From: Lepidodermella squamata
Lineage: Eukaryota > Animalia > Gastrotricha
Length of the DNA stretch: 64,000 nt
Assembly (NCBI GenBank): GCA_047495785.1
Contig: JBLDXI010000064.1
Location: 1-64,000 of the forward strand
Reading direction: 5' to 3'
Below are positions 41,917-62,541 of the stretch, piece after piece. Position numbers and translations under genes: made by a program. Below the pieces are notes generated by a model. It had not been told where the DNA came from and did no database searches. It saw only the letters and a list, made by a program, of their open reading frames with translations. Positions within the stretch are counted from its first letter, which is position 1. Each line of letters opens with the position of its first letter.

Positions 41917-42730
41917 GGTTTCCTGGCGGAAAAATTCGATCTCAAATACATGCTAGTGCACACCAAGTTTTGACTTGGTTGAGTGCGGAAATGTTCCTAG
42001 CGCATACGCAAAATTTTAATTCAAGCGCTGCTTTTCGGGCCACAATTTCGTTTCCTGTTATCCTACTTCTCTCGGGTGTCCAAACAATTTGGTAATTTGA
42101 CCGTGCTGAAAGTTCCGTCACCGCTGCTATTCTTTCTATTTTCTAGGATGTCAACAATGAACTACCTACCTACAACAATTTGGAATCTTGCTTGACCGGT
42201 GCGGGTGAGTGTTTAACCTTTTTCTCTAATGTCTTTCGTTTCGGCATGCTACTGTTTTGAAAAAAGTCGACCACTTTACACTAGCACTAGCGCAATGTAA
42301 ACGTGACCTAACCACTGTGAGTCCATTTTTTACACCCCTTTCAACAAATTGAATGGACTTAGTCAGCCTGGAAAGATCTACACTGCTGTGCGTGCAGATC
42401 CTGAAACATTCTCGCGATGCGACGCAAGATCGGCTTGTTCGGAAACCACAAACTCGCGACTGGCTGTGATCGAAACCGAAGCTGAGCGGCAAGCTGTCTA
42501 CGCCGCGATGACAAGCGCTTCAATCACCACCGCTTACATCGGCTTGTCGAAAACTAACGACCAATGGTTGTGGGATGACAGTTCAGCCTATGCGGACATG
42601 CCACCCTGGGCGCCTGGCTACCCGTCCGAGGCTAAGATGAACCGATGTGTTGGCCTGGCGAGCATTCTCGATGCAGCTGTTCAGTTGACGGATGGGTCTT
42701 GCGATTCGCCTTCAGCTAGCGCTTACATTT
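41917..42730 (+). pseudogene. Gene B7: fragmented relic (exon 4/5-like, exon 6, part of exon 9, truncated lectin exon)
   Basis: FKRCFSGHNFVSCYPTSLGCPNNL; DVNNELPTYNNLESCLTG; lectin exon from ~42363 breaks before the final Cys. Confidence 0.75.
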
Positions 42731-43880
42731 CTTCAGCTCAGTGTGCGACTTTCAGGGGGGATGGGGGAGGAGGGGGGCGGGGGGGCCCGGCCGGGCCAGA
42801 TGGGCAAAATGAGAATTTATCCCACTGTTTTGTTTTTTGTTAATTTTAGAAGGTTCTGGGACGTGTTTTAGTCGAAAATCCACAACGTTTTGTTGCTTCG
42901 CTCGGTTATTAGCCGAAATGACACGTCATTTTGGCAAAAGCAGCAAAGAAAATTATTTCATCCCTGGGAGCTCGGGAGCTCGAAGATCGCACCCTGCTTC
43001 AACTTTGTTATTCGTGTTAGTTCTCTAAGTATCACATATACCGGAAAAAGGGTAAAATGTGGTATGCAGTATTTCTGCTCTGAAAATTCAATGTCTGACA
43101 ATCAAATGTTTTGGGGAACGTTTCCACTTGTATGCTATTGTGTTCAGTGTTCGTAAATCTGCTCCTTCATTCGTCGACTCTATTGCTCGTTTTCTTTTAG
43201 AATATTTTCAGCTCTTATAAATTTCGTGTCAGCAATTGATAGACTCCATGAATCTGCTTGTTTACATCAGCCTCTGGCTTGTCGCCGGCTCTCAGGGTTA
43301 CCCATCTGAGGCATTGTGGCGTTGCTTCTCAATTTTCGACAATCATCACAACGGCTGTAATGGCGATTGCAGGCAAGCTGAATACCAGGTTATTACAGTC
43401 ATTCAGTTTCATTGTGTAAAAACTTGATGGTGTAAATGAACATTTATCCTCAATTCAGTCCGCAAAGTGGTTTCGCAGCATGGCTGACTGCACCAAAGGA
43501 GTGAGTGTGAACTTAGTATCATTTTTGCATATTGTTGCGATTTTCTCTACTTTGTAGTACGCTCGACTTTGCTACAACCGTGATGACTTCAGCTTCAGGT
43601 GCCTTCCCCACCCGACGCCGTGCAACATAACCATAGAAAACCCGGTTTGAAAAGCGTCTTGATTTTCTCAACATTTCTCAGCACCATATCGACTCGCAGG
43701 CTGGATGATTGCGCGAACCAACCCGATAGGGTTCCCCTAGCGGCGGAGCCGCAGCCTGAACCGGAGGTCCAGCGCCTCTCTCTCAACTTCGCCGGTCGAG
43801 GCGACAATGGTAGAGGCGTTTTGCGCTGGACGAAAAACGAAGCTAGGGGAACGAATTTTAACGATAAAAATATGGAAAAA

Positions 43881-46800
43881 TAAGTCGTAGATAGATCTTT
43901 TTTTAAACCTCTGTATAAAAACTTTCCAGCTGTTTTCATCGGGCGGTTAATTTTTGGCGAATTTTTATTCATAAAAAACTACCCAACTGCTCATTAATAT
44001 TCATGAGCTGCTTACGCCGCCGTCTGGGTCACGGTTACCGGCACCCTCATGACCGAGGTTAGTTACCTCACACGCGAGAGCGGGGTCGTTGCTGTGTGAC
44101 TCTTCAAAATTTCAACTTTAAGCCGGTTTGGCGGCCCTCCCTGGGGGGAGGGCTGCATCAGTGACATTCTGCGAAAAATTCTGCATCGAACAGTCTAAAG
44201 TTTGTTGATAGGCGATAAACGGTTGATTTTCTATCGAATTTACAAGTTGCGCGTACATGAAAAAGTGGCGCTCACTCACTGTGTGTGAAATTTTCAAGGC
44301 GCGTGTGACACCCAGATAGGTGCATAATTTATCGTGACAAAGTCGGTTTTTTAGATACTAGGAAGGACGGCCGAATTTTTGGTACCAAAAACGCCGCGAG
44401 ATTCGCAAGATTTCCTTTGACTATAGCGTTTTGCGCGCGATTGATTTTTAGTGAAAATTAAAATTTCAATTCGTCAATTTTTTTGACACCTCACTCGGGT
44501 AGCGCTCATGTTTAATTGCACGTAGAGAGTAGCAAATTTTGCGCTGAATTTTTAGAGACCAACCGCGCTATCGTAGCCCTTATGGTTTTGGAGCTATAGG
44601 AGGCGCGGTAAATCGCGTTTTTAAGCCTATTTTTAGTGCGCGGCGGCGCTCACACACTCACGGAGAGTCGGTTTCTGTCCAATTTTGGACACATGCAGCA
44701 GTTCTGTGCGCATATCAAAATAACACTGGTCGACGTAGAATTTCATGACCAATCGAACAAGCCTAAGATCATCGTCGTAGCCCTCATAGTTTTGTGCCTA
44801 TAGGAGGCGCGGTCGATCCACCTTAAAATTTCGAAATTTCGTTGTTTTTGTGAATTTTTTCTCGACGGTTTGGAAGAGACCCGTTGAAACAAAACAACCA
44901 TTCCTAGTACAACCTTCGACAGGCTTTCGAACGGTGAAAACCGCATGTCGATGCCTCTCACAGTTTTTTGCCAATAAGCCGAGCGGTAAAATATGAGATA
45001 AAAAACACAATTGGTAAATCTCGAAATTTCTCTTCTACAAATCCAGGTCATATTTACCCGCAACTTCAGTGACGAATAATCATGAGATAGAAGTAACTTG
45101 AGACGCTCTATTGAATGGTAGACGCCACATGTTCACAGGGCACACCCATTTGACGAACCGCCCTTGACAAAGTCAAATTTTTTTATATTGTCAACTTACT
45201 TTACACTCTCATTTCAGTGGTATGGCTAGTTCGCGCTAATACCTTTATGATGTCAACGCTTAGAGCAAAGTCCGCTGGCCATTTTGAGACCAGGCTGGTC
45301 GTTATACCCGGTGTGTGAAATTTTCAGGGCGCGTGTGACACCCTGATAGGTGCGGAATCTGTCTTGACAAAGTCGGTTTTTTAGATAGTAGAAAAGATGG
45401 CCGATTTGTTGGTACCAAAACCGCTGAGAGATTCGCAAGATTTCCTTTGACTAAAGCAGTTTGCGCGCGATTTATTTTTAGTGAAAATCAAATTATATAT
45501 TTTTTCGAGTTTCGCTAATTGTTTTGACATCTCACCCTGGTAGCGCTCATGTTTGAATACACCTGGAATGTAGCAAATTTTGCGCTGAATTTTTAGAGCC
45601 CAACCGCATAATCGTAGGGCTTATGGTTGTCGAGCAATAGAAGGCGCGGCAAATCGCGTTTTCAACCCATTTTTAGTGCGCGGCGGCGCTCACACACTCA
45701 CTGAGAGCCGTTTTCTGTTAAATTTTCGACACGCGTAGCAGTTTTGTGCGCACAAAGACATTATATAGGCCGACGTAGAATTTCAAGACGAATCGAACGA
45801 CACTAGGCGCATCGTCGTAGACCTCTTAGTTTGTTGTCTATAGTAGGCGCGGCCGATCCACTTTAAAATTTCGAAATTTTTCCGTTTTTGAGATTTTTTC
45901 ACGACGATTAGAAATAGTCCCGGTGTAATAAAACGAACATTTCAATTTGACGGGCTTTCGAGCGGCGAGAACCGCATGTTAACACCTATCATAGTTCTTT
46001 GCCAATAGGCCACGCAGTATATTATGAGATAAAAAACAGAGCACGTAAATTTTGAAATTTCGTTTCTTTAATTCCGGGTAATCAGCGACGAATTTTGATG
46101 AAAACTAGGTAACTCGAGCCGCCCTTTAAAATGGTATAAGCCCCACATTCACAGGGTGCACCCTATTGACACCGCACCCCTTGTCAAAGTCAAATTTTTT
46201 TAATTTTGTTGACCAACTTTGCACTCTCATTTTTTCATTCAGCGAACTTACGCTGGTGTATTAATGATTCTAACGCGTAGAGCATTGTCAGCTAACAATT
46301 TTGAGACCAGGCTGGTCTCTGTGGCCGCCGTATTTATGACGATATTCATCGCGCGGTAAAACTTGGATAGCCATATTTTCAGTGCGCCCACTCACTTGCT
46401 TTTTTTTACCTGTGTTTTTTTATTTGTGCGCAAGATTAATTGCAACCATCCTGTGCAGAACAATGCGAGGAATAGAACGAGACTACGCCCATTTTCTATT
46501 GAATTTACAAGTTGCGCGCACTTGAAAAGTGGCCCTCACCAAGTGTGCATGAAATTTTCAGGGCGCGAGTAACCCCCAGATAGGTGCGGAATTTGTCGTA
46601 GCCAAGTCGGATTTTTAGATACTAAAAAACAAGGCCGATTTTTTGGTATCAAAACCGCCGCGAGATTCGCCAGATTTCCTTTGACTAGAGCGTTTAGCGC
46701 GCGATTGATTTTTAGTGAAAATTAAAATTTCAATTTTTTCGACTTTCGTCATTTTTTTTGACACCTCATCCTGGTAGCGCTCGTATTTGAATGCACCTAA

Positions 46801-49800
46801 ATTCTAGCAAATTTTGCGCTGAATTTTTAGAGACCAACCTCGTTATCACAGCCATCATGGTTGTTGAACAATAATAGGCGCGGTAAATCACGTTTTTCGG
46901 CCTAGTTATAGTGCCCGGCGGCGCTCACACACTCATTCAGATTCGATTTCTGTCAAATTTTAAACACATGCAGTGCGTTGTGCGCACATACTCTTTAAAC
47001 AGGCCGACGTAGAATTTCAAGACGAACCGAACGAGACTAGGCCCATCGTCGTAGCCCTCATAGTTTTTTGCCTATAAGAGGCGCGGTATAACTTGTTTTG
47101 ATCCACCTTAAAACTTGAAATTTCGAGATTTCGACGTTTTTGTGAATTTTTTCGCGACCATACGGAAGCGACCGGGCGTAATTTAATAGCCATTTCTAGT
47201 ACAACATTTCACGGGCTATCCATGGGTGAAAACTGAAAGCCGATACCGGCTGCCGTTCTTTGCCCATAAGCCTCGCGGTAAAATTTGTGATAAAAAACAA
47301 ACCCAATAAATTTCGAAATATCGTTTCTTCAGTTCTGGCTCATTGAAATGCGAGTTCAGTGGCGAATTTTTAAGAGAAATGGGCAATTCGAGGCGCTCTA
47401 TCGAACGGTATAAGCCTCATGTTCACAAGGCGCACCCATTTGACAGCATGCCCTTTGTAAGGGTCAAATTTTGAGCGAAGCCGCGCCTCCATGCACACAA
47501 GTTTCACATATGTATCGTATATTATTCGATAGCTTGTGTTATTTACTGCAGCTTGGGAGAGTTAGCCCTCATGGTTACGGAGCTATAAGAGGCGCGGTAA
47601 ATCGCGTTTTTCAGCCTATTTTTAGCGCGCCGGCGGCGCTCACACACTCACTCAGGGTCGATTTCGGTCAAATATTAAGCACATGCAGCAGTCTTGTGTG
47701 CACATAGACATTGCTTACGCCGACGTAGAATTACAAGACGAATCGAATGAGACTAGGCCCATGATCGTAGGCATTATAGTTTTTTGTCTATGGTAGGCGC
47801 GGCCGATCCACCTTAAAATTTTAAAATTTCGACGTTTTTGAGAATTGTTTAACGACGATTAGGAATAGTCCCGGTGTAATAAAATAACAATTTCTAGTAA
47901 AGAATTTGACGGGCTTTCGAGGGGTGAAAACCGCATGTCAACACCTGTCACAGTTTTTTGCCAAAGGGCCACGCGGTATAATTTGAGATAAAAAACAAAG
48001 CCAGTCAATTTTGAAATTTCGCTCCATCAATTCTCTGTATTATTAAACAGCAAATTCATTTACGAATATTCATGAGAAATAGGTAATTGGAGGCGCCCTC
48101 ATAAAAATTATAAACCCCACATTTACAGGACGCACCCATTTGACGCCACACCCTATTTCGGAATCAAATTTTTTTTTAATTTGTTGACTTACTTTGCACT
48201 CTCATTTTTTTCATTCAGCGAACTTACGCTGGTATATTAATGATTCTAACGCGTAGAACATTGTCAGCTAATAATTTTGAGACCAGGCTGGTTTTTGTGG
48301 CTGCCGTATTTATGACGATATTAACCGCGCGGTAAAACTTGGTATGGCATATTTTTAGTGCGCGCACTCACAGTCAGGCTTTTTCACTTGCATTTTTGAC
48401 CTGTATGCAATATTTGTGCGCAAGATCAATTGCAACCATCCTGTGCAGAACAATGCGAGGCAGTGTGCGAAGTAGGATGCTCGAGTTGGGGGTACTTTCA
48501 ACCATTTTCTGGCCCGAAATTTCAGACCAATCAAACGAGACTACGCCCATCATCGTAGCACTCATAGTTTTGTGCCTATATGAGGCGCGGTAGAACGTGT
48601 TTCGATCCACCATAAAAATTGGAAATTTCGAAATTTCGATGTTTTTGTCACGCTTCTCACGGCCATACCGAATCATCCCGTAGTATAAGAAGTCGTAGAT
48701 AGATCTTTTTTTAAACCTCTGTATAAGTCGATGGCTACGACAATGGGACTAGAAAATTTTTATTTTCACTAAAAATCAATCGTGCGCAAAACTCTGCGGT
48801 CAAAGGAAAACTAGCGAATCTCGCGTCGGTTTTAATACCAAGAATCGGCCGTCCTTCGGAGTAGCAAGAAATCAATTTTGAACACGACAAATTCCGCAGC
48901 TGAAAGGGTGTTACCCGCGTGTCTAACTAAGTCGTAGATAGATCTTTTTTTAAACCTCTGTATAAAAACTTTCCAGCTGTTTTCATCGGGCGGTTAATTT
49001 TTGGCGAATTTTTATTCATAAAAAACTACCCAACTGCTCATTAATATTCATGAGCTGCTTACGCCGCCGTCTGGGTCACGGTTACCGGCACCCTCATGAC
49101 CGAGGTTAGTTACCTCACACGCGAGAGCGGGGTCGTTGCTGTGTGACTCTTCAAAATTTCAACTTTAAGCCGGTTTGGCGGCCCTCCCTGGGGGGAGGGC
49201 TGCATCAGTGACATTCTGCGAAAAATTCTGCATCGAACAGTCTAAAGTTTGTTGATAGGCGATAAACGGTTGATTTTCTATCGAATTTACAAGTTGCGCG
49301 TACATGAAAAAGTGGCGCTCACTCACTGTGTGTGAAATTTTCAAGGCGCGTGTGACACCCAGATAGGTGCATAATTTATCGTGACAAAGTCGGTTTTTTA
49401 GATACTAGGAAGGACGGCCGAATTTTTGGTACCAAAAACGCCGCGAGATTCGCAAGATTTCCTTTGACTATAGCGTTTTGCGCGCGATTGATTTTTAGTG
49501 AAAATTAAAATTTCAATTCGTCAATTTTTTTGACACCTCACTCGGGTAGCGCTCATGTTTAATTGCACGTAGAGAGTAGCAAATTTTGCGCTGAATTTTT
49601 AGAGACCAACCGCGCTATCGTAGCCCTTATGGTTTTGGAGCTATAGGAGGCGCGGTAAATCGCGTTTTTAAGCCTATTTTTAGTGCGCGGCGGCGCTCAC
49701 ACACTCACGGAGAGTCGGTTTCTGTCCAATTTTGGACACATGCAGCAGTTCTGTGCGCATATCAAAATAACACTGGTCGACGTAGAATTTCATGACCAAT

Positions 49801-52800
49801 CGAACAAGCCTAAGATCATCGTCGTAGCCCTCATAGTTTTGTGCCTATAGGAGGCGCGGTCGATCCACCTTAAAATTTCGAAATTTCGTTGTTTTTGTGA
49901 ATTTTTTCTCGACGGTTTGGAAGAGACCCGTTGAAACAAAACAACCATTCCTAGTACAACCTTCGACAGGCTTTCGAACGGTGAAAACCGCATGTCGATG
50001 CCTCTCACAGTTTTTTGCCAATAAGCCGAGCGGTAAAATATGAGATAAAAAACACAATTGGTAAATCTCGAAATTTCTCTTCTACAAATCCAGGTCATAT
50101 TTACCCGCAACTTCAGTGACGAATAATCATGAGATAGAAGTAACTTGAGACGCTCTATTGAATGGTAGACGCCACATGTTCACAGGGCACACCCATTTGA
50201 CGAACCGCCCTTGACAAAGTCAAATTTTTTTATATTGTCAACTTACTTTACACTCTCATTTCAGTGGTATGGCTAGTTCGCGCTAATACCTTTATGATGT
50301 CAACGCTTAGAGCAAAGTCCGCTGGCCATTTTGAGACCAGGCTGGTCGTTATACCCGGTGTGTGAAATTTTCAGGGCGCGTGTGACACCCTGATAGGTGC
50401 GGAATCTGTCTTGACAAAGTCGGTTTTTTAGATAGTAGAAAAGATGGCCGATTTGTTGGTACCAAAACCGCTGAGAGATTCGCAAGATTTCCTTTGACTA
50501 AAGCAGTTTGCGCGCGATTTATTTTTAGTGAAAATCAAATTATATATTTTTTCGAGTTTCGCTAATTGTTTTGACATCTCACCCTGGTAGCGCTCATGTT
50601 TGAATACACCTGGAATGTAGCAAATTTTGCGCTGAATTTTTAGAGCCCAACCGCATAATCGTAGGGCTTATGGTTGTCGAGCAATAGAAGGCGCGGCAAA
50701 TCGCGTTTTCAACCCATTTTTAGTGCGCGGCGGCGCTCACACACTCACTGAGAGCCGTTTTCTGTTAAATTTTCGACACGCGTAGCAGTTTTGTGCGCAC
50801 AAAGACATTATATAGGCCGACGTAGAATTTCAAGACGAATCGAACGACACTAGGCGCATCGTCGTAGACCTCTTAGTTTGTTGTCTATAGTAGGCGCGGC
50901 CGATCCACTTTAAAATTTCGAAATTTTTCCGTTTTTGAGATTTTTTCACGACGATTAGAAATAGTCCCGGTGTAATAAAACGAACATTTCAATTTGACGG
51001 GCTTTCGAGCGGCGAGAACCGCATGTTAACACCTATCATAGTTCTTTGCCAATAGGCCACGCAGTATATTATGAGATAAAAAACAGAGCACGTAAATTTT
51101 GAAATTTCGTTTCTTTAATTCCGGGTAATCAGCGACGAATTTTGATGAAAACTAGGTAACTCGAGCCGCCCTTTAAAATGGTATAAGCCCCACATTCACA
51201 GGGTGCACCCTATTGACACCGCACCCCTTGTCAAAGTCAAATTTTTTTAATTTTGTTGACCAACTTTGCACTCTCATTTTTTCATTCAGCGAACTTACGC
51301 TGGTGTATTAATGATTCTAACGCGTAGAGCATTGTCAGCTAACAATTTTGAGACCAGGCTGGTCTCTGTGGCCGCCGTATTTATGACGATATTCATCGCG
51401 CGGTAAAACTTGGATAGCCATATTTTCAGTGCGCCCACTCACTTGCTTTTTTTTACCTGTGTTTTTTTATTTGTGCGCAAGATTAATTGCAACCATCCTG
51501 TGCAGAACAATGCGAGGAATAGAACGAGACTACGCCCATTTTCTATTGAATTTACAAGTTGCGCGCACTTGAAAAGTGGCCCTCACCAAGTGTGCATGAA
51601 ATTTTCAGGGCGCGAGTAACCCCCAGATAGGTGCGGAATTTGTCGTAGCCAAGTCGGATTTTTAGATACTAAAAAACAAGGCCGATTTTTTGGTATCAAA
51701 ACCGCCGCGAGATTCGCCAGATTTCCTTTGACTAGAGCGTTTAGCGCGCGATTGATTTTTAGTGAAAATTAAAATTTCAATTTTTTCGACTTTCGTCATT
51801 TTTTTTGACACCTCATCCTGGTAGCGCTCGTATTTGAATGCACCTAAATTCTAGCAAATTTTGCGCTGAATTTTTAGAGACCAACCTCGTTATCACAGCC
51901 ATCATGGTTGTTGAACAATAATAGGCGCGGTAAATCACGTTTTTCGGCCTAGTTATAGTGCCCGGCGGCGCTCACACACTCATTCAGATTCGATTTCTGT
52001 CAAATTTTAAACACATGCAGTGCGTTGTGCGCACATACTCTTTAAACAGGCCGACGTAGAATTTCAAGACGAACCGAACGAGACTAGGCCCATCGTCGTA
52101 GCCCTCATAGTTTTTTGCCTATAAGAGGCGCGGTATAACTTGTTTTGATCCACCTTAAAACTTGAAATTTCGAGATTTCGACGTTTTTGTGAATTTTTTC
52201 GCGACCATACGGAAGCGACCGGGCGTAATTTAATAGCCATTTCTAGTACAACATTTCACGGGCTATCCATGGGTGAAAACTGAAAGCCGATACCGGCTGC
52301 CGTTCTTTGCCCATAAGCCTCGCGGTAAAATTTGTGATAAAAAACAAACCCAATAAATTTCGAAATATCGTTTCTTCAGTTCTGGCTCATTGAAATGCGA
52401 GTTCAGTGGCGAATTTTTAAGAGAAATGGGCAATTCGAGGCGCTCTATCGAACGGTATAAGCCTCATGTTCACAAGGCGCACCCATTTGACAGCATGCCC
52501 TTTGTAAGGGTCAAATTTTGAGCGAAGCCGCGCCTCCATGCACACAAGTTTCACATATGTATCGTATATTATTCGATAGCTTGTGTTATTTACTGCAGCT
52601 TGGGAGAGTTAGCCCTCATGGTTACGGAGCTATAAGAGGCGCGGTAAATCGCGTTTTTCAGCCTATTTTTAGCGCGCCGGCGGCGCTCACACACTCACTC
52701 AGGGTCGATTTCGGTCAAATATTAAGCACATGCAGCAGTCTTGTGTGCACATAGACATTGCTTACGCCGACGTAGAATTACAAGACGAATCGAATGAGAC

Positions 52801-53738
52801 TAGGCCCATGATCGTAGGCATTATAGTTTTTTGTCTATGGTAGGCGCGGCCGATCCACCTTAAAATTTTAAAATTTCGACGTTTTTGAGAATTGTTTAAC
52901 GACGATTAGGAATAGTCCCGGTGTAATAAAATAACAATTTCTAGTAAAGAATTTGACGGGCTTTCGAGGGGTGAAAACCGCATGTCAACACCTGTCACAG
53001 TTTTTTGCCAAAGGGCCACGCGGTATAATTTGAGATAAAAAACAAAGCCAGTCAATTTTGAAATTTCGCTCCATCAATTCTCTGTATTATTAAACAGCAA
53101 ATTCATTTACGAATATTCATGAGAAATAGGTAATTGGAGGCGCCCTCATAAAAATTATAAACCCCACATTTACAGGACGCACCCATTTGACGCCACACCC
53201 TATTTCGGAATCAAATTTTTTTTTAATTTGTTGACTTACTTTGCACTCTCATTTTTTTCATTCAGCGAACTTACGCTGGTATATTAATGATTCTAACGCG
53301 TAGAACATTGTCAGCTAATAATTTTGAGACCAGGCTGGTTTTTGTGGCTGCCGTATTTATGACGATATTAACCGCGCGGTAAAACTTGGTATGGCATATT
53401 TTTAGTGCGCGCACTCACAGTCAGGCTTTTTCACTTGCATTTTTGACCTGTATGCAATATTTGTGCGCAAGATCAATTGCAACCATCCTGTGCAGAACAA
53501 TGCGAGGCAGTGTGCGAAGTAGGATGCTCGAGTTGGGGGTACTTTCAACCATTTTCTGGCCCGAAATTTCAGACCAATCAAACGAGACTACGCCCATCAT
53601 CGTAGCACTCATAGTTTTGTGCCTATATGAGGCGCGGTAGAACGTGTTTCGATCCACCATAAAAATTGGAAATTTCGAAATTTCGATGTTTTTGTCACGC
53701 TTCTCACGGCCATACCGAATCATCCCGTAGTATAAGAA
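43881..53738 (+). repeat. Tandem duplication inside element 1: 43881-48691 = 48928-53738, with a 236-bp filler at 48692-48927
   Basis: Offset 5047; identical ORF translations at 44743/49790, 45253/50300, 46363/51410, 47471/52518 and 48339/53386. Confidence 0.95.
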
Positions 53739-54220
53739 CCATTTCTGCTACAACATTTCACGGGCAATGTTATGGTGAAAGCCGTAAGTCAATACCTTTT
53801 ACGCCAATAAGCCACGCGGTAAAAGTTGAGATAAAAATCAAAACAATTAAATTTCAAAATTTCGCATTCACGATTTCCGGTCATATCTAACTGCAACTTC
53901 AGTGACGAATTTTCATGGGAGAATTGGGATGGCAGCAAAACTTACAGAGAGAAAAAACGAGAGGTCGAACCCACGACTTTTCTTAGGAATTTAAAATTGT
54001 TCAAAAAAATTGTTTAATTAATTGGAGTACAACTAAATGACATGGATTTATTGAATCTACGTCGCTGATGACGAAAACGCCGACAACACGAGAATCAGGA
54101 TGACAGAAAAAATTACAGAGCAAAAGAACGATACGTCGGGTTCGAATCCACGACCTTTCTTTGGAATTTGGAGTCATCTCGATTTTTTCGGACTTTCGTG
54201 ACCGAAATAACGAATTAATG

Positions 54221-55432
54221 TTTTTTCGTCAGCTAGTTTTCACCTTTTGTCAGCTAAATCCAGTTTTCGTCAGCAATACCTTTTTCTGTCAGCAACGACA
54301 CTTTTTTACAGCTAAACTACTATTTATCAGCTAATTTAATTAAAATACAACTTTTCGAGTTAATTCGAGAACTAATTAAATAAACACTAAATTAAAGCTA
54401 ATTTAGCTAATTTAAAAAGAGCATAAACCATAGAGCATATAAATTGTCCACGCTGAACATTCCTTACCACCTCAGCTACATATCCCTTTTTACCGATTTC
54501 GAAAATCGTTTTTTAAATGACAAGGAAGGTCAGTACCAACTCGTTCATTTTGGGCGCTGAGATTTTGAGCATTTATAACAAGGAATTCTGAGATCGGAGG
54601 AAGACGCCGATTTCACAGAAAGATTCCTCTCGGTGATATCTTTCAAATGACACCTTGAACTCAGATAATTGATGTCGCAATCGCGAGTGGTAATTACCTG
54701 AATTTTGTGGGGTAACTTGGCCGATTTTAATGTGCGAAATGCGCACCAAAACTTGGCCTAGACATGAGAGGGCGTGATGAATCATCGCCCTAGTTTCTGC
54801 CAGATGGTTCATCGCCAAGTGAAATAGCCATGCGGCCAGGTTACCCCACGCTCCGGCCAAGTGACCCCACTCGGTCAAGATCACTTCAACCTCCACAGAA
54901 TCGATTGATTTTATCGGTCGTCGACCGGGTTTTGACCAATCGATCGAGAATTGAACGGAGATTTTTTTGGTATAAAATTTAAAGCGAAACAAGTTACCGG
55001 AGACGTACTAGGTTCAAAAAACCATATTTCCGGCCAAGTTACCCCACACCACGGTACTAGAGCTACTATAAGCAGAGAATATTACATCCATTTAGTTAAC
55101 GAATTAATGTTCATAGATCATGGAACGAGCGGCGTGTTGATTTAATTAGACATTGAATTGTTTATTTTCCATCCCTGCTGGGAGCTCGGGGATCGAAGAT
55201 CGCACCCTAGCTCACAGAACGAGTGACACGGGTTCGACCAGGTGGACGACCGCGACCGCGGCCTCGTACAAGAGCAGAAAATTACGGGTTGATAATCGTA
55301 ACTATGACATTTATGTTAAATTAGCTGATAAATAGTAGTTTAGCTGTAAAAAAGTGTCGTTGCTGACAGAAAAAGGTATTGCTGACGAAAACTGGATTTA
55401 GCTGACAAAACGTGGAATTAGCTGATGAAAAA
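54221..55432. mobile_element. Nested foldback with ~115-bp arms (54221-54339, 55316-55432), containing a pogo-type MITE remnant
   Basis: TCAGCTA-rich inverted arms; internal GTGGGGTAACTTGGCC / GGCCAAGTTACCCCACACCACGGTA. Confidence 0.7.
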
Positions 55433-55699
55433 ATATACACCCGAAATAACGTTGCTACTATGAAAGCTAGCAGGTCGTGCTTAGTCTTATTTGTCTGTAT
55501 AGGATTGGAGCCATCGATCTCGTGCACAAGAAGGCATATTGGTCGAAATTCGAAGTGACAATGCTAATAGTGAGAGTACGCACCCTTAAAAAATGCCCAT
55601 CCCAAGTTTTGCGCGTGACCTTAACAAATTAAAGAGGATGTTACCTACTCCTCATTTATGTTTGTAACTGCTGTCGCAGCTAATAATCTTCCGAAATCA

Positions 55700-57000
55700 A
55701 TAATTTGAAATTTCAAAAGATAATTTGGATGTTTTTATCTCAGTTATTAACGCGCGGATTACTGGCTGGGAACGATGTAAGTTATTGACCTGCGGTTTTT
55801 ACTATTCGAAAGCCCGTCAAATTTTGCACTAGACACGCGTATTATATAATGCCAAAAATCTTCCAAATCGTCGTAAAAAAGATAAAAAAACATCGAAATT
55901 TCGAAATTTTAAGGTGGATCAACCGCGCCTATTATAGTTTCAAAACTACGATGGCTACGACTATGAGACTAGTCTCGTTCGATTCGTCTTGAAATTCTAC
56001 ATGGTACAGTGTAATTAATTTGTGCGCACAAAACAGGTAATAGCGTTTAAAACTTGACAGAAATCGTCTCGGAGTGAGTATGTGCGCGCCGCCGTCACGT
56101 TAAAAATAGGCTGAAAAACGCGTTTTTCCGCGCCTCTTAAATTTCGACAACCATGAAGCCTATGATGACGTGCCTAGTCTCTAAAAATTCAGCGGATAAT
56201 TTACTACATTTTACGTGTATTCAAATTGGAGCGCCATCGGAGTAAGGTGTCCAAATATTTGACGGAAGTCAGCAAAATTGAAATTTTTATTTTCACTAAA
56301 AATCAGTCGTGCGCAAAACGCTGCGGTCAAAGGAAAATTAGCGAATCTCGCGGCGGTTTTAGTACCAAAAAATCGGCCGTCCTTCGTATCTAGAAATCAA
56401 CTTTGAACACGACAAATTCCGCAGCTGAAAGGGTGTTAACCGCGTGTCTAACATTTTATACCTGGTTGTTGAGAGTCTAATTTTGTGAAATTTCGACGTT
56501 TGAATAATTGTCAACCGTTTCGTTATAAACCGATCAATCCGATAAATACCGGGTTTGGACTGTTCGATAGAAAATTTTGTGAGGAATTTTTTCTTGTGCC
56601 CAAATGAGGTCAGAAATCAAATTTCAAATTAAAATTTCGAGCTCACGCGTAATAAAGCCGTGACCCAGGTCATCAGTATGCCGGCGGCGGTGACCCAGCT
56701 AAAGAAGGTCAGGGCTTATGAATATTCATGAAATCTTCACTTGCTTATATGAATAAAAAATCTCCACAAATCAGCCGTCAGGCCGATCTTTCGGAAAAAT
56801 CTTTGCATCTAAGGTTTTCGGGTATGCTCTACACGATGGTATTTTTCATATTTTTTTCCGAAGATATCCTATTAACTAACTTGGAGAAGCGGTCAAGTGC
56901 ATACAATTTGTCCTCATTGATAACGCCGAGAGCGGCGTGCTCGAGACCTGATAATTAAGTAGCGGCCGCCGTCGCTAAAAACGTTCCGGTTCACGCAATC
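55700..57000 (-). repeat. Diverged inverted copy of the element's left end and first repeat unit
   Basis: GGTTCACGCAATC (56988-57000) is the reverse complement of the left terminus with one mismatch; ~56280-56390 is the reverse complement of ~44360-44467. Confidence 0.8.
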
Positions 57001-59733
57001 ATTGAAGATTGGGGAGGGGCGAAAAAAGTTCCCCTCCAAGATGGCTAGGAGGGGAATTTCAAGGGGTAGTGATTTGAATCGTATTAAACCTTTTTGCTCA
57101 GCGCAAAGCTGCCAAAATGAACCAAATTAACTTCCTAGCATGGTTTTTTACTGGATGATTGCGCGAACCAACCCGATAGGGTTCCCCTAGCGGCGGAGCC
57201 GCAGCCTGAACCGGAGGTCCAGCGCCTCTCTCTCAACTTCGCCGGTCGAGGCGACAATGGTAGAGGCGTTTTGCGCTGGACGAAAAACGAAGCTAGGGGA
57301 ACGAATTTTCACGATAAAAATACGGAAAAATAAGTCGTAGATAGATCTTTTTTTAAACCTGTGTATAAAAACTTTCCAGCTGTTTTCATCGGGCGGTTAA
57401 TTTTTGGCGAATTTTTATTCATAAAAAACTACCCAACTGCTCATTAATATTCATGAGCTGCTTACGCCGCCGTCTGGGTCACGGTTACCGGCACCCTCGT
57501 GACCGAGGTTAATTACCTCACACGCGAGAGCCGGGTCGTTGCTATGTGACTCTTCAAACATTCAACTTAAAACCGGTTTGGCGGCCCTCCCTGGGGGGAG
57601 GGCTGCATCAGTGACATTCTGCGAAAAATTCTGCATCGAACAGTCTAAATTTTGTTGATAGGCGATAAACGGTTGATTTTCTATCGAATTTACAAGTTGC
57701 GCGCACTTGAAAAAGTGGGCCTCACCAACTGTGTGTGAAATTTTCAAGGCGCGTATGACACCCAGATAGGTGCGAAATTTGTCGTGACAAAGTCGGATTT
57801 TTAGATACTAGAAAGGACGGCCGATTTTTTGGTACCAAAACCGCCGCAAGATTCGCAAGATATCCTTTGAATATAGCGTTTGCCGCGCGATTGATTTTTA
57901 GTGAAAATGAAATTTTTAATTATTTCGACTTTGGTCAATTATTTTGACGGCCCAACCTGGTAGCGCTCATATTTGATTGCACATAGATTGTAGCAAATTT
58001 TGCGCTGAATTTTTAGAGACCAACCTCGTTATCACAGCCCTCATGGTTGTTGAGCCAGACGAGGCGCGGTAAATCGCATTTTCCAACCCATTTTTAGTGC
58101 GCGGCGGCGCTCACACACTCACTCAGAGTCGATTTCTGTCAAATTTTCGACACGCTTAGCAGTTTTGTGCGCACATACACATTGCATAGGTCGACGTAGA
58201 ATTTCAAGACGAATCGAACGACACCAGGCCCATCGACGTAGCCCTCATAGTTTCTTGTCTATATGAGGCGCGGCCGATCCACCTTAAAATTTCAAAATTT
58301 CGAAATTTCGATGTTTTTGTGAATTTTCTCGCGACGTTCTGGAAATGTCCTGGCGTTATTTTATTACTGTTGCTAATGCAAAATTTCACGGGCTATTCAA
58401 TGGTTCTAACCGCATGTCAAAACCTTCGACCGTTTTTTGCCAATAATACACGCGGTAAAATGTGAGATAAAAAACAAACATGGTGAATTTCACTATTTCG
58501 CTTTCACAATTCCGGGTCATATTTAACTGCGACTCCAGTGACTCCATTTTCGTTAGACATAGGTTATTCGAGGCGCCCTACTTCATGGCACATGCCTTAC
58601 GTTCACAGGCCGCACCCATCTGACGCCACGCCCATGTCAAAGTCAATTTTTTAAAACTTTGTTGACCAACTTTGCACTCTCATTTCGATGGCTTAGCCAA
58701 TACGCGCTGACATTTAAATGATTCTAGCGCTTAGAGCATGGTCAGCTGGTCATTTTGAGAATAGCCTCGTAGTTGTAGCCCTCGTATTTATGGCGCTAAT
58801 TATCGCGCGGTAATACTGGGTATATGACCATATTTCTAGTGTGCGGACTCATTTTTTGGCATTTTTGACCAGCATGCAATAATTGTGGGCAAAATTAATT
58901 GAAGCCATCCTATGCAGAAAAATGCGAGGAATCGAACGAGACTACGCCCATGGCCATAGCACGCATATTTTTTTGTCTATAGGAGGCGCGGTTCAATTTG
59001 CTTTGATCCACCTTAAAACTGGAAAATTTTGAAATTTTGATTTATTTTGTGATTTTCTCTCGGTACCAAAACCGCTACGGGATTCGCAATATTACCTTTG
59101 ACTATAGCGTTCAGCGCTCGGTTGATTTTTAGTGAAATTAAAAATTTCAATTTTTCCTACTTTCGTCAATTTTTTTGACACCTCACCCTGGTAGCGCTCG
59201 TGTTTGAATGCACTTAGAATGTAGCAGATTTTCCGCTGAATTTTTAGAGACCAAGCTCGTCTTTGCAGCCCTCGTGGTTGCGGAGCTATAAGAGGCGCGG
59301 TAAATCGCGTTTTTCAGCCTATTTTTAGCGCGCCGGCCGCACTCACGCGCTCACTGAGATGGGATTTCTGTCAAATTTTGTACACATGCAGCAGTTTTGT
59401 GCGCATATCAAAATTGCACTGGTCAACGTAGAATTTCAAGACGAATCGAACGACACTAAGCCCATTGTCGTAGCCCTCATAGTTATGAAGGTATTGAAGG
59501 CGCGGTAAATCTCGCTTCGATCCACCTTAAAACTTGAAAATTTCGAATTTTCGATGTTTTTATGAATTTTCTCGCGACGATCTCGAAACATCCTGCCGTT
59601 ATTTGATAACCCTCTCTAGTGCGGAAGCTTAGTCAAATCAGAACAAAAATGTCATTTTTCAGACACAAAGGTGGAGACAGCTCTCTCGCAATAAAACGTT
59701 CATTGTGCTTGAGCTAAATAGTAGAATTTCTGG

Positions 59734-60005
59734 GCGCACGCTGATTGGTCAATCGATCGTTGCTATGACTCCCGGATGAAACATGTTGGTTGTGCGATCC
59801 ATGAAATTTTTTGCAACAAGTGTTTTTTGCCGCAGTAAATTGCTACGATTATTATGGGGTTTACGCTCGTGGTCAATAGAAACCGTGCAGAGGGCGTGGC
59901 AAGGTCATTTTTTGCATAAATAGAAAATAATTTATTAGTGGATCGCACGACTAAATTGTTTCATCCCGGAGTCATAGCAACAATATATTGACCAATCAGC
60001 GCGCG
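59734..60005. repeat. Inverted repeat with ~50-bp arms inside element 2
   Basis: GCTGATTGGTCAAT..TTGCTATGACTCCCGGATGAAACA pairs with TGTTTCATCCCGGAGTCATAGCAA..ATTGACCAATCAGC. Confidence 0.75.
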
Positions 60006-60632
60006 GGTCAAAGTGCTACTTACTACTTGAAACACGATGGTTTCTCTTTTTGGCGACATTTTTGCCGGTGACAAATAAGCAATACAGCCCCACTTATTAT
60101 AATGTTGTCACTATGGTCCGAATCTTTACCGACGGCATCGCTTGCATTAATCCCACCTGATTCCCCGTTATTTCAACCCCGTCAAATCACTCCAAATGAC
60201 TCAAATGAAGTCCAAGATGTTAAGGAGGAAATTATTTTTGGACGCTAAAATTAATTAATTTTTTGGGTAAGTTTTCGTTCATTCGAGGACATTTCAGCTG
60301 GCAACAGTGAAGCAATTTTGCCGAAATTTTCATCAACATTTGATCCGAATTTTCATTAAAACTGAGCTCGCATTTCGACTGTCAATAAGGCTGGTCTGTC
60401 CCTTGCGGACATGTCGCCAGCGAAAATGTCGCCGAATACCGATTTCGCACTATTTCGCACTCGTACTATTCTCAATTACGAGTCAAATAATTTGTCACAT
60501 AATCGCATCATATCAAAAAAATGCCGGCGGTTTTGTCCCCTGCTGAAAAGTCGCACGCCCATGAATTAATAGGTTTGCTGCTTGGCATAATGAATCATCA
60601 AGCATGACTTGGAGAAAATTAACAAAAAATTA

Positions 60633-60864
60633 CCGTAGAGCGGTACAATTTTGAACAAGTACAAAGTTGAACATTTTTTCAAAAGTACAATTTTGAACGA
60701 ACGTTTGCATTGAAAATTTCGTTAATGTTCAAAATTGTACTTCACACTCACGAAAGTACAATTTTGAACACTTTCATTTTTTTCAATGCAAACGTTCGTT
60801 CAAAATTGTACTTTTGAAAAAATGTTCAAAGTTGTACCCTGTTCAAAATTGTACCGCTCTACGG
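60633..60864. mobile_element. 232-bp Tc1/mariner-pogo-type MITE with TA TSD
   Basis: TA-CCGTAGAGCGGTACAATTTTGAAC..GTTCAAAATTGTACCGCTCTACGG-TA; arms ~85 bp. Confidence 0.9.
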
Positions 60865-62541
60865 TAAGTCATTTTCTTTTTATGCCGTCGCTGGGCTGGG
60901 TCTTGATGCGCAGGACTTAGAAAAAATCGCAACAAAAACGACTCGGCGAGTGGCTGGTAATTTCGGGTAAAAAACATGTTTAATGAATGAAACGTCACTT
61001 GATTTTGTTTGTAGCTTTAACAATAACCCGAGTAAAGAAATGCGTTCTTGTTGAACTAATAATTTCAACAAAAATAAAGAAATGGTCTGTTTATGGCTTG
61101 TTTTGTTAATAATTTCATCTCTGTTGGAGATAAAGAACGCGACGGCGTAATATAATAGCTATGTCTACTACAACATTTTGCGGGCTATTTTATGGTGAAA
61201 ACCGCATGTCAATACCCCTCATGGTTTTTTGCCAATAACGCACGCGGTATAATTTGAGATAAAAAACAGACCGAGCAAATTTTGAAATTTTGCTTTACCA
61301 ATTCCTGGTCATTTTTATCTGAAATTGTAGTGACGAATTTTCATGACAAATAGGTAACTCGAGGCGGCCTATCGAATGGAATATGCCCCATGTTCACGGG
61401 CCGCACAATGTGGGCAGCTCACCCTTTGTTAAGGTCAAATTTTGATCGGAGCTGCGCCTACATGCAAATGAGTTTCATATACGTATCGTATATCATTCGA
61501 TAGCTTTAAATACTTGCTACACCTTTGAAGCGGTTATTTGTCAAATTTAGACAAAAAATTGACAAAAAATGATTTTTTGACTTGAAAATGACTTGTCACG
61601 TGAAATTTGACATTAGAATACAATTTTTATATTTTTCAATCACGGTTCAAATCAACTTCAAGCCCAAGTCCGTTCACCTGGTTTTAGATTAATTCCAGGT
61701 AATAAAATGCAAGTCGTTAATTATGCAGAATAAAATTATGTTGAGGGTAATCACGGTGTGCGCCGCTTTTAACCGGGTCATGATAACCAGTTAACCGGGT
61801 CATGATCGATTTATTAATGCATCATTCCCTGTGGCTGCCATTGTCGAGAGAATATTGAAGATTAGGGGGGGGGGGCGAAAAAAGTTCCCCTCCAAGATGG
61901 CTAGGAGGGGAATTCCAAGGGGTAGTGATTTGAACTGACTTAACCGTTCATGCTCAGCGCAAAGCTGCCAAAACGAACCAAATTAATGTCCTAGCATGGT
62001 TTTTTACTGGATTCTTCGATAAATACGCATCCTTTCCGGGCAATTGGGATGAATGCTTGCACGCCGCACAACATTTGCCGGTGAGTTGCCCATAGTTGTT
62101 TAGTTAAGTGTTTAGTGGGTAGTGAGTTCGTTGAATAATTCAAATTTAAAAATTTTCAATATCGCGCGTACCTTCTTCAATTAGTTCGAGATCGCAAAAA
62201 GTAGTACCTATTTTTAGCGCAGTTCCAAGAGGAGCTGATAATTTTAGCTATGAGACGTCGCATTCGCCCAAAGTTGATAGCTTTTACTGTTTTTCGCCTA
62301 AGGAATGCATGGTTTTACGTAATTTTGAAACAATTTTACCTAAATGATTGAGCTTTGGCTTGGAGAAATGAGAGGCTGCTGCTTTATTCGTACAACGCTT
62401 TATCTTCCCCCGTACAACAAGTTTATCTTCGAAACGTACAACAAATAATTAAATATTATTGTATCTCCGAAACGTACAACATTCATTTATTTATTTATTC
62501 TCTCCTAAAACATCAATTATCTTCGACCCGTACAACAATAT

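What the first reader, a model, noticed from the sequence alone, without database searches (positions are those of the whole stretch)
43701..62012. Two related elements without TIRs stacked head-to-tail at the same 6-bp site: candidate site-specific mobile system
Seen: the order is CTGGAT (43701-06), element 1, CTGGAT (57151-56), element 2, CTGGAT (62007-12). Removing both elements and two hexamers restores exon 4 of B8. Paralogues B3 (~24536) and B4 (~27829) have one CTGGAT at the equivalent position, so they act as empty-site controls. The elements share asymmetric termini (GATTGCGCGAACC... and ...CCTAGCATGGTTTTTTA), have no TIR, LTR or poly-A tail, carry a 9-bp-stem hairpin (TTCCCCTCC..GGAGGGGAA) ~100 bp from the right end, and have no convincing ORF. 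They differ internally and at the right end, so they are not a simple local duplicate. Established: TIR-less elements with short terminal direct repeats include tyrosine-recombinase Cryptons and target-specific Dada transposons; Helitrons make no TSD and MULE TSDs are usually ~9 bp. Inference: this is a large non-autonomous family that integrates precisely, either through a circle carrying the 6-bp core or by re-targeting its own junction.
Basis: partly seen in the sequence, partly recalled or inferred. Interest (0 to 1): 0.85.

Follow-up and report, generated by a model that had tools for sequence, protein, structure and literature searches.

The report
Stacked non-autonomous Helitron-like transposons
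Two gene-less copies of a rolling-circle (Helitron-like) jumping gene sit head to tail inside a lectin gene, and the repeated CTGGAT is the element's own tail, which resembles the short site it prefers to insert behind, not a footprint of insertion.

Summary
The layout is real: CTGGAT, element 1 (13.4 kb), CTGGAT, element 2 (4.9 kb), CTGGAT, inside an exon of a C-type lectin paralogue. Two paralogues carry a single CTGGAT there.

The hexamer is neither a target-site duplication nor a recombinase core. In 22 of 24 genomic copies the right end is exactly ...CATGGTTTTTTACTGGAT, followed by unrelated DNA. The DNA before the left end (GATTGCGCGAACC...) varies: CTNGAT in 12 of 17 host-side junctions and ...AT in 16 of 17.

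The elements are non-autonomous members of a Helitron-like family. A 23.7-kb copy on the same contig (C64:715135-738810) shares both ends and encodes an HUH Rep, a PIF1-type helicase and a GIY-YIG nuclease. Relatives of that protein occur in an ostracod, a tunicate, a hagfish and metagenomes; 16 of 20 match Pfam Helitron_like_N.

Head-to-tail stacking is a family habit: about 14 of 31 distinct left-end junctions abut another element's right end.

Most likely mechanism (inferred): the Rep nicks after a CTRGAT-like motif at both the element's tail and the target, so resident tails become preferred targets.

The termini fit neither the canonical Helitron nor the Helentron template. This is a new variant of a known kind.

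Earlier notes of this scan describe the same transposase lineage and self-stacking elsewhere in this genome. Read-level checks were unavailable.

The parts
43701..43706 (+). Host CTGGAT, the target motif. It is the start of a lectin exon, directly after the cag| acceptor.
   Evidence: Paralogues at 24536 and 27829 have one CTGGAT in the same context.
43707..57156 (+). Element 1: a 13,450-bp non-autonomous Helitron-like element, including its own terminal CTGGAT (57151-57156).
   Evidence: Its first 200 bp are 100% identical to C31:172785-172984 and 99-100% identical to about 10 other copies. Its right end belongs to the family.
43707..43877 (+). Left terminal sequence of element 1 (GATTGCGCGAACCAACCCGATAGGG...), upstream of the internal duplication.
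43878..53738 (+). Internal 5,047-bp tandem duplication (43878-48691 = 48925-53738, 99.98% identical) made of ~1-kb repeat units that are 77-82% alike.
   Evidence: Self-BLAST.
56988..57000 (+). 13-nt inverted copy (12/13) of the element's 5' end. It is specific to one subgroup.
   Evidence: present in 9 copies of element 1's right-end subgroup, absent from element 2's subgroup and from the autonomous copy.
57029..57056 (+). Subterminal hairpin of element 1, with a 9-bp stem.
   Evidence: Present in 21 family copies, with at most one stem or loop change, at 127-132 nt from the end. It is in the MFE fold of element 2's homologous tail.
56997..57156 (+). Right terminal sequence of element 1, ending CATGGTTTTTTACTGGAT.
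57151..57165 (+). Head-to-tail joint: right end CTGGAT directly abutting left end GATTGCGCG. This is the sequence expected for a circle junction.
   Evidence: This particular joint is unique in the genome sample.
57157..62012 (+). Element 2: a 4,856-bp non-autonomous Helitron-like element, including its terminal CTGGAT (62007-62012).
61885..61912 (+). Subterminal hairpin of element 2.
62013..62083 (+). Continuation of the interrupted lectin exon (TCTTCGATAAATACGC...), up to a gt donor near 62081.
   Evidence: the rejoined flanks translate as AGFFDKYASFPGNWDECLHAAQHLP and align to the paralogues. A C-type lectin domain lies in the upstream ORF 42349-42843.

Best explanation
Elements 1 and 2 are two different non-autonomous members of one family of Helitron-like (rolling-circle) transposons. 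They inserted one after the other at the same point of a lectin exon.

Shown:
- The family has at least 24 copies with an invariant 3' terminus ...TTTTTTACTGGAT and a 5' terminus GATTGCGCG....
- It makes no target-site duplication.
- It lands directly 3' of a motif that resembles its own tail (CTNGAT, more loosely YTNRAT).
- A 23.7-kb copy with the same ends encodes Rep(HUH, YxxxY), a PIF1-like helicase and a GIY-YIG nuclease.

Inferred:
- The HUH Rep nicks single-stranded DNA just after a CTRGAT-like motif. At the donor it cuts host...AT|GATTGCG on the left and ...CTGGAT| on the right, and joins the ends into a circle with the joint CTGGAT|GATTGCG.
- It then nicks a target after a similar motif and pastes the strand in.
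- Because every resident copy ends in the preferred motif, new copies often land exactly behind, or exactly in front of, old ones. This builds mixed head-to-tail chains.
- The same chains can be re-mobilised as units when an internal right end is read through.
- In the window, the host CTGGAT was the first target. The second insertion used either that same host hexamer or the first element's terminal hexamer; the final sequence is the same either way.
For: The hexamer belongs to the element:
- 22 exact and 2 one-mismatch sites of CATGGTTTTTTACTGGAT, with 0 in the reversed control.
- Every right end is followed by a different flank.

Left flanks vary but are biased:
- CTNGAT in 12/17, YTNRAT in 15/17, A at -2 in 16/17 and T at -1 in 17/17 host-side junctions.
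- Background frequencies are 0.0009, 0.0077 and 0.079 (AT); binomial P is about 1e-17 or less.

No TSD and an empty site:
- Paired copies with non-CTGGAT left flanks show no TSD.
- The empty site in the paralogues has one hexamer.

Autonomous partner C64:715135-738810:
- Its left end is 97% identical over 198 bp, and its first 1,571 bp resemble elements 1 and 2.
- Its right end is 87-88% identical.
- It carries the HUH motif NKCHVHGG and the tyrosine motif SYLVKYVSGKE.
- It has a PIF1 domain (E 6e-12); the same ORF in the C60 copy has Helraiser as its best PDB hit (E 3e-7). It also has a GIY-YIG domain (E 1e-9).

Related copy on C29:
- It has all three Rep motifs, with helicase and GIY-YIG in one 669-aa frame.
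- It is directly followed by another GATTGCGCG... element.

Protein family:
- 449 representatives at E<=1e-3.
- Among 20 long ones, PIF1 matches 18, Helitron_like_N 16 and GIY-YIG 9.
- The family profile hits PIF1 and Helraiser helicases and SLX1 nucleases.

Stacking is general:
- About 14 of 31 distinct left-end contexts abut a right end.
- [X]n+element arrays occur at 12 sites, and there is a three-element stack on C16.

Literature:
- Helraiser makes circles with a precise right-end/left-end joint, uses a 3' hairpin as terminator and can bypass it (PMC4778049).
- Head-to-tail Helitrons without host bases are reported from maize and bat (PMC2267711).
Against:
- The terminal AT is present on both sides, so the cut can be placed at three equivalent positions. 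The nick-motif model is not uniquely fixed by the sequence.
- Five of 17 host-side junctions are not CTNGAT (TTCAAT, TTTAAT x2, TCTAAT, TTTAGT).
- Some flanks counted as 'host' may be tails of unrecognised related elements. That would inflate the motif.
- The Rep of the partner copy itself scores only E 0.033 against Pfam Helitron_like_N. Homology rests on motifs and on relatives.
- The share of insertions at resident tails (~40%) is far higher than the hexamer alone predicts. Extra context recognition or co-mobilisation must be assumed.
- The role of the GIY-YIG domain is unknown.
Confidence: 0.82

Rival explanations
1. One-step arrival: elements 1 and 2 were already joined elsewhere and moved into the lectin exon as a single composite. 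Transposition started at element 1's left end and read through its right end to element 2's right end.
For: - Composites do seem to travel. The same X|element joint (..CCCCGTTTTTCTAGAT|GATTGCGCGAACC) occurs at 12 sites with different outer flanks.
- 3'-end bypass is documented for Helraiser (PMC4778049).
Against: - The element 1|element 2 joint, with its specific upstream context, was found only in the window among the sampled junctions.
- The two elements belong to different right-end subgroups, each of which also occurs alone.
Confidence: 0.12
2. Site-specific recombination (Crypton-like tyrosine recombinase): a circle carrying a CTGGAT core recombines with a host CTGGAT and leaves the core on both sides.
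For: In the window alone the three identical hexamers look exactly like attL, attP-like and attR cores.
Against: - Across the family the right hexamer is invariant, but the left one is CTTGAT, CTCGAT, CTAGAT, TTCAAT, TTTAAT and others. Strand exchange within a core would leave hybrids on both sides.
- No recombinase domain was found in any ORF of the autonomous copies scanned.
- Those copies encode a Rep-helicase instead.
Confidence: 0.02
3. DDE-type cut-and-paste element with a 6-bp target-site duplication (Dada-like or other), re-inserted at its own end.
For: A 6-bp direct repeat flanks the pair in the window.
Against: - There is no TIR in element 2 or in the autonomous copy.
- Copies whose left flank differs from CTGGAT have no TSD.
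- No DDE transposase is associated.
- Only the right hexamer is constant.
Confidence: 0.01
4. The tandem arrangement comes from unequal recombination, local duplication or mis-assembly rather than from two insertions.
For: - Element 1 contains a 99.98%-identical 5-kb internal tandem duplication, which could be a recent unequal exchange or an assembly artefact.
- No reads could be laid.
Against: - Elements 1 and 2 differ by 11-15% in the parts they share and have different interiors.
- Base-exact right-end|left-end joints of the same kind recur at 8 or more distinct junction types on other contigs.
Confidence: 0.03

Closest known systems
Canonical Helitrons (HLE1; e.g. Helraiser, maize and bat Helitrons)
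   Same: - Rep(HUH, two Tyr) plus PIF1-like helicase transposase.
- No TSD and no TIR, with asymmetric conserved ends.
- A subterminal 3' hairpin.
- Non-autonomous derivatives that share only the termini.
- Internal repeats and size variation.
- Precise head-to-tail joints (PMC2267711, PMC4778049).
- The cut can be written as an A|T insertion.
   Different: - The 5' end is (T)GATTGCGC, not TC.
- The 3' end is CTGGAT or CTAGAT: a CTRR followed by a fixed AT.
- The strong hairpin lies ~100-130 nt, not ~10-20 nt, from the end.
- There is an extended target preference that resembles the element's own tail.
- The transposase ends in a GIY-YIG nuclease.
- The Rep is so divergent that Pfam Helitron_like_N misses it in this genome's copies.
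Helentron / Helitron2 (HLE2)
   Same: - A large multi-domain Rep-Hel transposase with an extra C-terminal nuclease.
- An OTU-like domain is seen in one relative, and an OTU-like ORF lies next to one copy.
- Internal tandem repeats occur in non-autonomous copies.
- One subgroup has a 13-nt inverted copy of the 5' end placed just upstream of the 3' hairpin, as in HLE2 asymmetric TIRs.
- One HLE2 family with a GIY-YIG domain (HelenSM92, Sphagnum) is mentioned in PMC11417382.
   Different: - Insertion is not between T and T.
- The inverted repeat is absent from the autonomous copy and from element 2's subgroup.
- The nuclease is GIY-YIG (SLX1-like), not an AP endonuclease.
- DUF6570 was not among the Pfam families matched by the 20 relatives.
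Bacterial HUH transposons IS91/ISCR and IS200/IS605 (works like these; not a member)
   Same: - Single-strand HUH chemistry.
- Insertion directly 3' of a short specific motif, without duplication.
- The cleavage motif at one end lies in the flank and at the other end inside the element.
- One-ended or read-through events and tandem multimers (established knowledge of these families).
   Different: Eukaryotic host, helicase-fused transposase, far larger elements, and no sequence relationship tested.
Cryptons and Dada transposons
   Same: Short direct repeats at the borders in this one locus, and precise integration.
   Different: There is no tyrosine recombinase or DDE gene, no TIR and no true duplication, and the hexamer is invariant on one side only.

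Membership tests
Helitron-like elements (rolling-circle transposons, broad sense) | The autonomous member encodes a Rep with an HUH motif and paired tyrosines, fused or adjacent to a PIF1-like helicase. | tested here: met
   - The C29 copy has FYTFTAND, CHVHGG and SYLVKYCAGKE and a PIF1 domain.
- The C64 partner has NKCHVHGG and SYLVKYVSGKE and PIF1 at E 6e-12.
- 16 of 20 relatives match PF14214 and 18 of 20 match PF05970.
Helitron-like elements (rolling-circle transposons, broad sense) | Non-autonomous copies share both terminal sequences with an autonomous copy. | tested here: met
   C64:715135-738810 has a left end 97% identical over 198 bp and a right end 87-88% identical over ~140-190 bp to elements 1 and 2.
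Helitron-like elements (rolling-circle transposons, broad sense) | No target-site duplication. | tested here: met
   The right hexamer is element-borne. Flanks of paired copies are unrelated. The empty paralogue sites have one hexamer.
Helitron-like elements (rolling-circle transposons, broad sense) | Circular or single-strand intermediates and replicative transposition. | not testable with these tools
No wet-lab data are available.
Canonical Helitron (HLE1) | 5'-TC start and 3'-CTRR end. | tested here: not met
   The start is GATTGCGC, or TGATTGCGC if the shared T is assigned to the element. The end is CTGGAT or CTAGAT: a CTRR is present but is always followed by AT.
Canonical Helitron (HLE1) | Insertion between host A and T. 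| tested here: inconclusive
   AT stands on both sides (16/17 left junctions, 24/24 right ends), so an A|T cut is one of three equivalent descriptions.
Canonical Helitron (HLE1) | Hairpin ~10-20 nt before the 3' end. | tested here: inconclusive
   Weak stems end 11-14 nt from the end in three right-end types but fold no better than shuffles (z -0.55 to +0.47). The strong conserved hairpin lies 101-128 nt upstream.
Helentron / Helitron2 (HLE2) | Insertion between T and T. | tested here: not met
   Bases after the right end are T, G, C or A without preference. The left flank ends in AT.
Helentron / Helitron2 (HLE2) | Short (12-16 nt) terminal inverted repeats, with a stem-loop after the right repeat. 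| tested here: inconclusive
   A 12/13 inverted copy of the 5' end lies upstream of the hairpin in 9 copies, including element 1. None is found in element 2's subgroup or in the autonomous copy.
Helentron / Helitron2 (HLE2) | AP-endonuclease domain or the DUF6570 marker. | tested here: not met
   The C-terminal nuclease is GIY-YIG. Neither an AP endonuclease nor DUF6570 is among the families matched by the 20 relatives at E<=1e-3.
Crypton (tyrosine-recombinase transposon) | Encodes a tyrosine recombinase, with the same core at both junctions. | tested here: not met
   No recombinase domain was found in the scanned ORFs of long copies. The left-side hexamer varies.
Dada / other DDE transposons | TIRs and a true 6-7-bp TSD. 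| tested here: not met
   No conserved TIR and no TSD outside CTGGAT-flanked cases.
Penelope-like elements (considered because of GIY-YIG and tandem stacking) | Reverse transcriptase next to the GIY-YIG nuclease; hammerhead ribozyme motifs. | tested here: not met
   GIY-YIG follows a PIF1 helicase in one frame. No RT domain appears in the Pfam scans. No Rfam hit in 43000-62500.

The most novel reading that the evidence does not exclude
This animal Helitron-like lineage is a sequence-directed rolling-circle transposon. Its HUH Rep recognises the same ~6-nt word (CTRGAT) at its own 3' end, at the circle joint and at the target. It therefore inserts at predictable sites and preferentially into the joints of resident copies, building mixed head-to-tail chains. 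The fused SLX1-like GIY-YIG nuclease supplies a second-strand or target cut that canonical Helitrons lack. This would be a eukaryotic counterpart of IS91/IS605-type motif-guided insertion.
Probability: 0.4. Interest if true: 0.7.

Novelty: new variant of a known kind. Interest (0 to 1): 0.55.

Why it matters
- It turns an apparent new site-specific mobile system into a readable case of rolling-circle transposition, with termini that can be placed to within 2 bp.
- It links a gene-less repeat family to its Rep-helicase-GIY-YIG partner.
- It gives a genome-wide target motif for a Helitron-like branch that is barely described in the literature searched here.
- Helitron target choice beyond the A|T or T|T dinucleotide is poorly understood. 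A lineage whose target resembles its own 3' end offers a direct test of how the HUH domain reads DNA: oligo cleavage and circle PCR.
- It explains why these elements pile up head to tail and disrupt genes, here a C-type lectin paralogue.
- Practically, annotation tools that look for TC...CTRR ends or short TIRs will miss this family.

Tried and rejected
The joint at 57151 and the 5-kb internal duplication are unverified at read level.
A 328-bp stretch of the autonomous copy (C64:736785-737112) was never fetched.
- The 'long copy' on C60 (387459-412477) is not one element. Only its last 4.46 kb (helicase and GIY-YIG, no Rep) matches the C64 copy. The OTU-like ORF beside it lies outside the shared part.
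- Penelope-like reading (GIY-YIG plus tandem stacking): dropped when the upstream ORF proved to be a PIF1 helicase and no RT or ribozyme was found.
- Pfam Helitron_like_N across the genome found 41 canonical hits, none next to this family's ends. The family's Rep is too divergent for that model. phmmer of the Rep ORF against PDB found nothing.
- Nematode test: the SL1 leader is absent.
- Terminal small hairpins are not better than shuffles. Whole-tail and whole-head folds are likewise not better.
That lead is not tested further.
ORFs were searched piece by piece, by reference.

Full report
**1. The observation**

- Element 1 is 43707-57156 and element 2 is 57157-62012, counting each element's final CTGGAT as its own.
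- They share 85% identity over the first ~1.6 kb and 89% over the last ~155 bp, and differ inside.
- Element 1 holds a 5,047-bp tandem duplication that is 99.98% identical (43878-48691 and 48925-53738). It is itself made of ~1-kb units that are 77-82% alike.
- The 9-bp hairpin is real and sits 101-128 nt from each right end.
- No ORF in the elements matches a protein family, and no Rfam family matches.
- Joining 43706 to 62013 restores a reading frame that aligns with paralogues at 24536 and 27829. Each has one CTGGAT right after a cag| acceptor. An upstream ORF of the same gene has a C-type lectin domain, so the host is an animal.

**2. What the hexamer is**

The window is C64:1-64000 of a 121-Mb assembly.
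- Searching the first 200 bp and the last 150 bp of the elements against the whole genome gave about 30 hits each.
- Every right end reads ...CCTAGCATGGTTTTTT(T)ACTGGAT and is then followed by unrelated sequence.
- The 18-mer CATGGTTTTTTACTGGAT occurs 22 times exactly and twice with one mismatch. The reversed control gives none.
- The DNA just before GATTGCGCGAACC differs from copy to copy: CTGGAT, CTTGAT, CTCGAT, CTAGAT, TTCAAT, TTTAAT, TCTAAT, TTTAGT.

So CTGGAT is the element's own 3' terminus, not a duplicated target and not a shared recombination core. Copies whose left flank is not CTGGAT show no repeat of that flank on the right. The only bases always present on both sides are AT, which leaves the exact cut ambiguous by two bases. 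One of the three equivalent descriptions is an A|T insertion of an element TGATTGCG...CTGGA.

**3. Target preference**

I used 17 left-end junctions whose upstream DNA does not look like another element's tail.
- 12 are CTNGAT and 15 are YTNRAT. Position -2 is A in 16, and -1 is T in all 17.
- In the window's host DNA these patterns have frequencies of 0.0009, 0.0077 and 0.079 (AT). The binomial P values are about 1e-17 or smaller.
- Caveat: some of these flanks may be tails of unrecognised relatives.

The family therefore inserts directly 3' of a word that resembles its own tail. The lectin exon happened to offer a perfect CTGGAT.

**4. Stacking is the rule, not the exception**

- About 14 of 31 distinct left-end contexts abut a recognisable right end of the same or a related family.
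- Twelve copies of the main element are preceded by one to three or more copies of a ~650-700-bp relative, 'X'. X runs from 5' GGTTGCGCACCAAAGG to GGTGCCCCGTTTTTCTAGAT 3'. The outermost flanks of these arrays are again CTGGAT or CTTGAT.
- On C16 three elements stand in a row (443543-447644, 447645-449059, 449060-461342).
- On C29 a coding element ending ...GGCCCGTTTTTCTGGAT is followed at once by GATTGCGCGAACCG....
- The hexamer alone cannot explain this frequency. CTNGAT sites outnumber element tails by orders of magnitude. Either more of the tail is recognised or stacks are re-mobilised together.
- The identical X|element joint at 12 differently flanked sites points to some co-mobilisation.
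- The element 1|element 2 joint itself was seen only in the window.

**5. The enzyme**

Two right ends of a slightly different type (TTTTTTTACTGGAT) had a 283-aa GIY-YIG ORF about 300 bp upstream. Walking upstream gave a PIF1-like helicase, whose best solved relative is the Helitron transposase Helraiser.

*The C60 copy.* It shares only its last 4.46 kb with the C64 copy and lacks a Rep.

*The C64 copy.* C64:715135-738810, minus strand, 23,676 bp.
- It starts with the family's left end (97% over 198 bp; left flank gagCTGGAT).
- It resembles elements 1 and 2 for its first 1,571 bp.
- It carries ORFs with the HUH motif NKCHVHGG and the tyrosine motif SYLVKYVSGKE, then the helicase, then GIY-YIG (GVVY...SYIGQT...REHN).
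- It ends with the family's right end.
- I did not splice these ORFs.

*The C29 relative.* This 59-69% related copy shows all three Rep motifs in one 954-aa frame. Its helicase and GIY-YIG lie in one 669-aa frame.

*The protein family.*
- phmmer of the 954-aa frame against 1.84 billion representatives found 449 relatives at E<=1e-3 and 76 at E<=1e-30.
- Of 20 long ones, 18 match PIF1, 16 match Helitron_like_N, 9 match GIY-YIG and 1 matches OTU.
- Named sources are an ostracod, a tunicate and a hagfish, plus metagenomes.
- The family profile hits PIF1 and Helraiser helicases and SLX1-type GIY-YIG nucleases in the PDB.
- In this genome's copies the Rep is too divergent for Pfam (E 0.033 at best).

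**6. Mechanism**

Shown: asymmetric conserved ends, no TSD, a motif-biased target, a conserved subterminal hairpin, a Rep-Hel-nuclease partner with the same ends, and base-exact head-to-tail joints.

From established work on Helraiser (PMC4778049):
- Rep nicks the left end and becomes covalently attached.
- The helicase unwinds the strand.
- A 3' hairpin signals termination, and the right end is nicked.
- The ends are joined into a circle with a precise right-end/left-end joint.
- The right end can be bypassed.

Inference for this family: both donor cuts and the target cut fall just after a CTRGAT-like word. One nicking specificity would then explain the invariant tail, the biased left flank, the circle-like joint at 57151-57165 and the habit of landing on resident tails. 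This resembles IS91 and IS200/IS605 logic (my knowledge, not tested here). What the GIY-YIG domain does is unknown. A second-strand or target cut is a guess.

**7. Comparison with known kinds**

- The family belongs with Helitron-like elements by enzyme and by overall anatomy.
- It fails the canonical Helitron end rule (TC...CTRR with a hairpin near the end).
- It fails the Helentron/Helitron2 rules (T|T target, short TIRs, AP endonuclease).
- One subgroup, including element 1, has a 12/13 inverted copy of the 5' end (56988-57000) just upstream of the hairpin, which recalls Helitron2 asymmetric TIRs. It is missing from element 2's subgroup and from the autonomous copy.
- In the paper library, the only link between a GIY-YIG domain and a Helitron-like element that I found is one moss HLE2 family, described as a capture (PMC11417382). 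Head-to-tail Helitrons are known from maize and bats (PMC2267711).
- Crypton, Dada and Penelope-like readings fail on tested defining features.

**8. Earlier notes of this scan**

Other agents had already described this transposase lineage in this genome.
- One note covers the very copy I identified as the partner: 651,499 letters beyond the window's end, reported as an intact 2,867-residue spliced gene.
- Another describes 'self-stacking' joints.

I reached the same reading independently before seeing these notes. They are AI notes, not evidence. A lead that such elements target a tRNA-Gln could not be tested with this family's left end.

**9. Limits**

- No read-level support was available.
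- Pairing of left and right ends into copies of 2.8-13.4 kb is inferred from position and strand only.
- The organism is not identified.

**Verdict.** The locus holds stacked non-autonomous members of a divergent, GIY-YIG-bearing Helitron-like lineage with non-canonical ends and a target that resembles its own tail.

Noticed in passing
G000 C42:1,248,000-1,345,000; C20:3,100,000-3,174,000; also C43, C99, C33: A more distant relative of the same Rep-Hel-GIY-YIG gene (37-39% identity) recurs with identical scores at a ~15.0-kb period (e.g. C42:1251000, 1265995, 1280988, 1296163). These are long head-to-tail arrays of a ~15-kb unit.
   Followed up: no
window 43878-48691 and 48925-53738: A 5,047-bp tandem duplication inside element 1 at 99.98% identity. 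It is either a very recent unequal exchange or an assembly artefact.
   Followed up: partly
L062:5368-6063 (+) = C60:407368-408063: This ORF has OTU-protease-like motifs by eye (..NPARGDCQFYAVS....GSGHYVALLP), but Pfam gave no hit. It ends at the breakpoint of a Rep-less 4.46-kb helicase/GIY-YIG fragment and lies outside the part shared with the C64 copy.
   Followed up: partly
window 62542-63090 (-): A 182-aa ORF with a SWIM zinc-finger match (E 1.7e-4) lies just downstream of the interrupted lectin exon. It may be a Mutator-type transposase remnant.
   Followed up: no
G000, 41 places (e.g. C35:58086, C15:2399564, C23:891767, C30:1363551, C64:116631): There are many canonical Helitron_like_N matches, several with identical scores. 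This genome therefore also hosts ordinary, apparently young Helitron families, separate from the GIY-YIG lineage.
   Followed up: no
L054:1-705 (+) = C34:~551.1-551.8 kb: An ankyrin-repeat ORF (E 6e-43) lies ~900 bp upstream of a partial right-end-like sequence ending TTTTTTTACTGGAT. It may be a captured gene fragment or simply a neighbour.
   Followed up: no
window 44498, 45539, 46773, 49545, 50586, 51820, 57959, 59190: Each ~1-kb internal repeat unit contains ...TTTTTTTGACACCTCACCCT|GGTAGCGCTCATGTTTGAATGCAC. This loosely recalls a T-rich tail followed by a G[AG]T[TA]GCGC head, so the internal repeats might be decayed stacked mini-elements. It rests on a loose pattern match only.
   Followed up: no
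L010:2359-2558 (-) (X unit tail) and L064:7629-7828 (C29 tail): The related right ends carry their own G/C-rich palindromes of the same flavour: GCCTCCCTCCCCC/GGGGGAGGGAGGC in X, and GTTCCCTTC..GAGGGGAAC in the C29 element. They lie ~110-190 nt from the end.
   Followed up: partly
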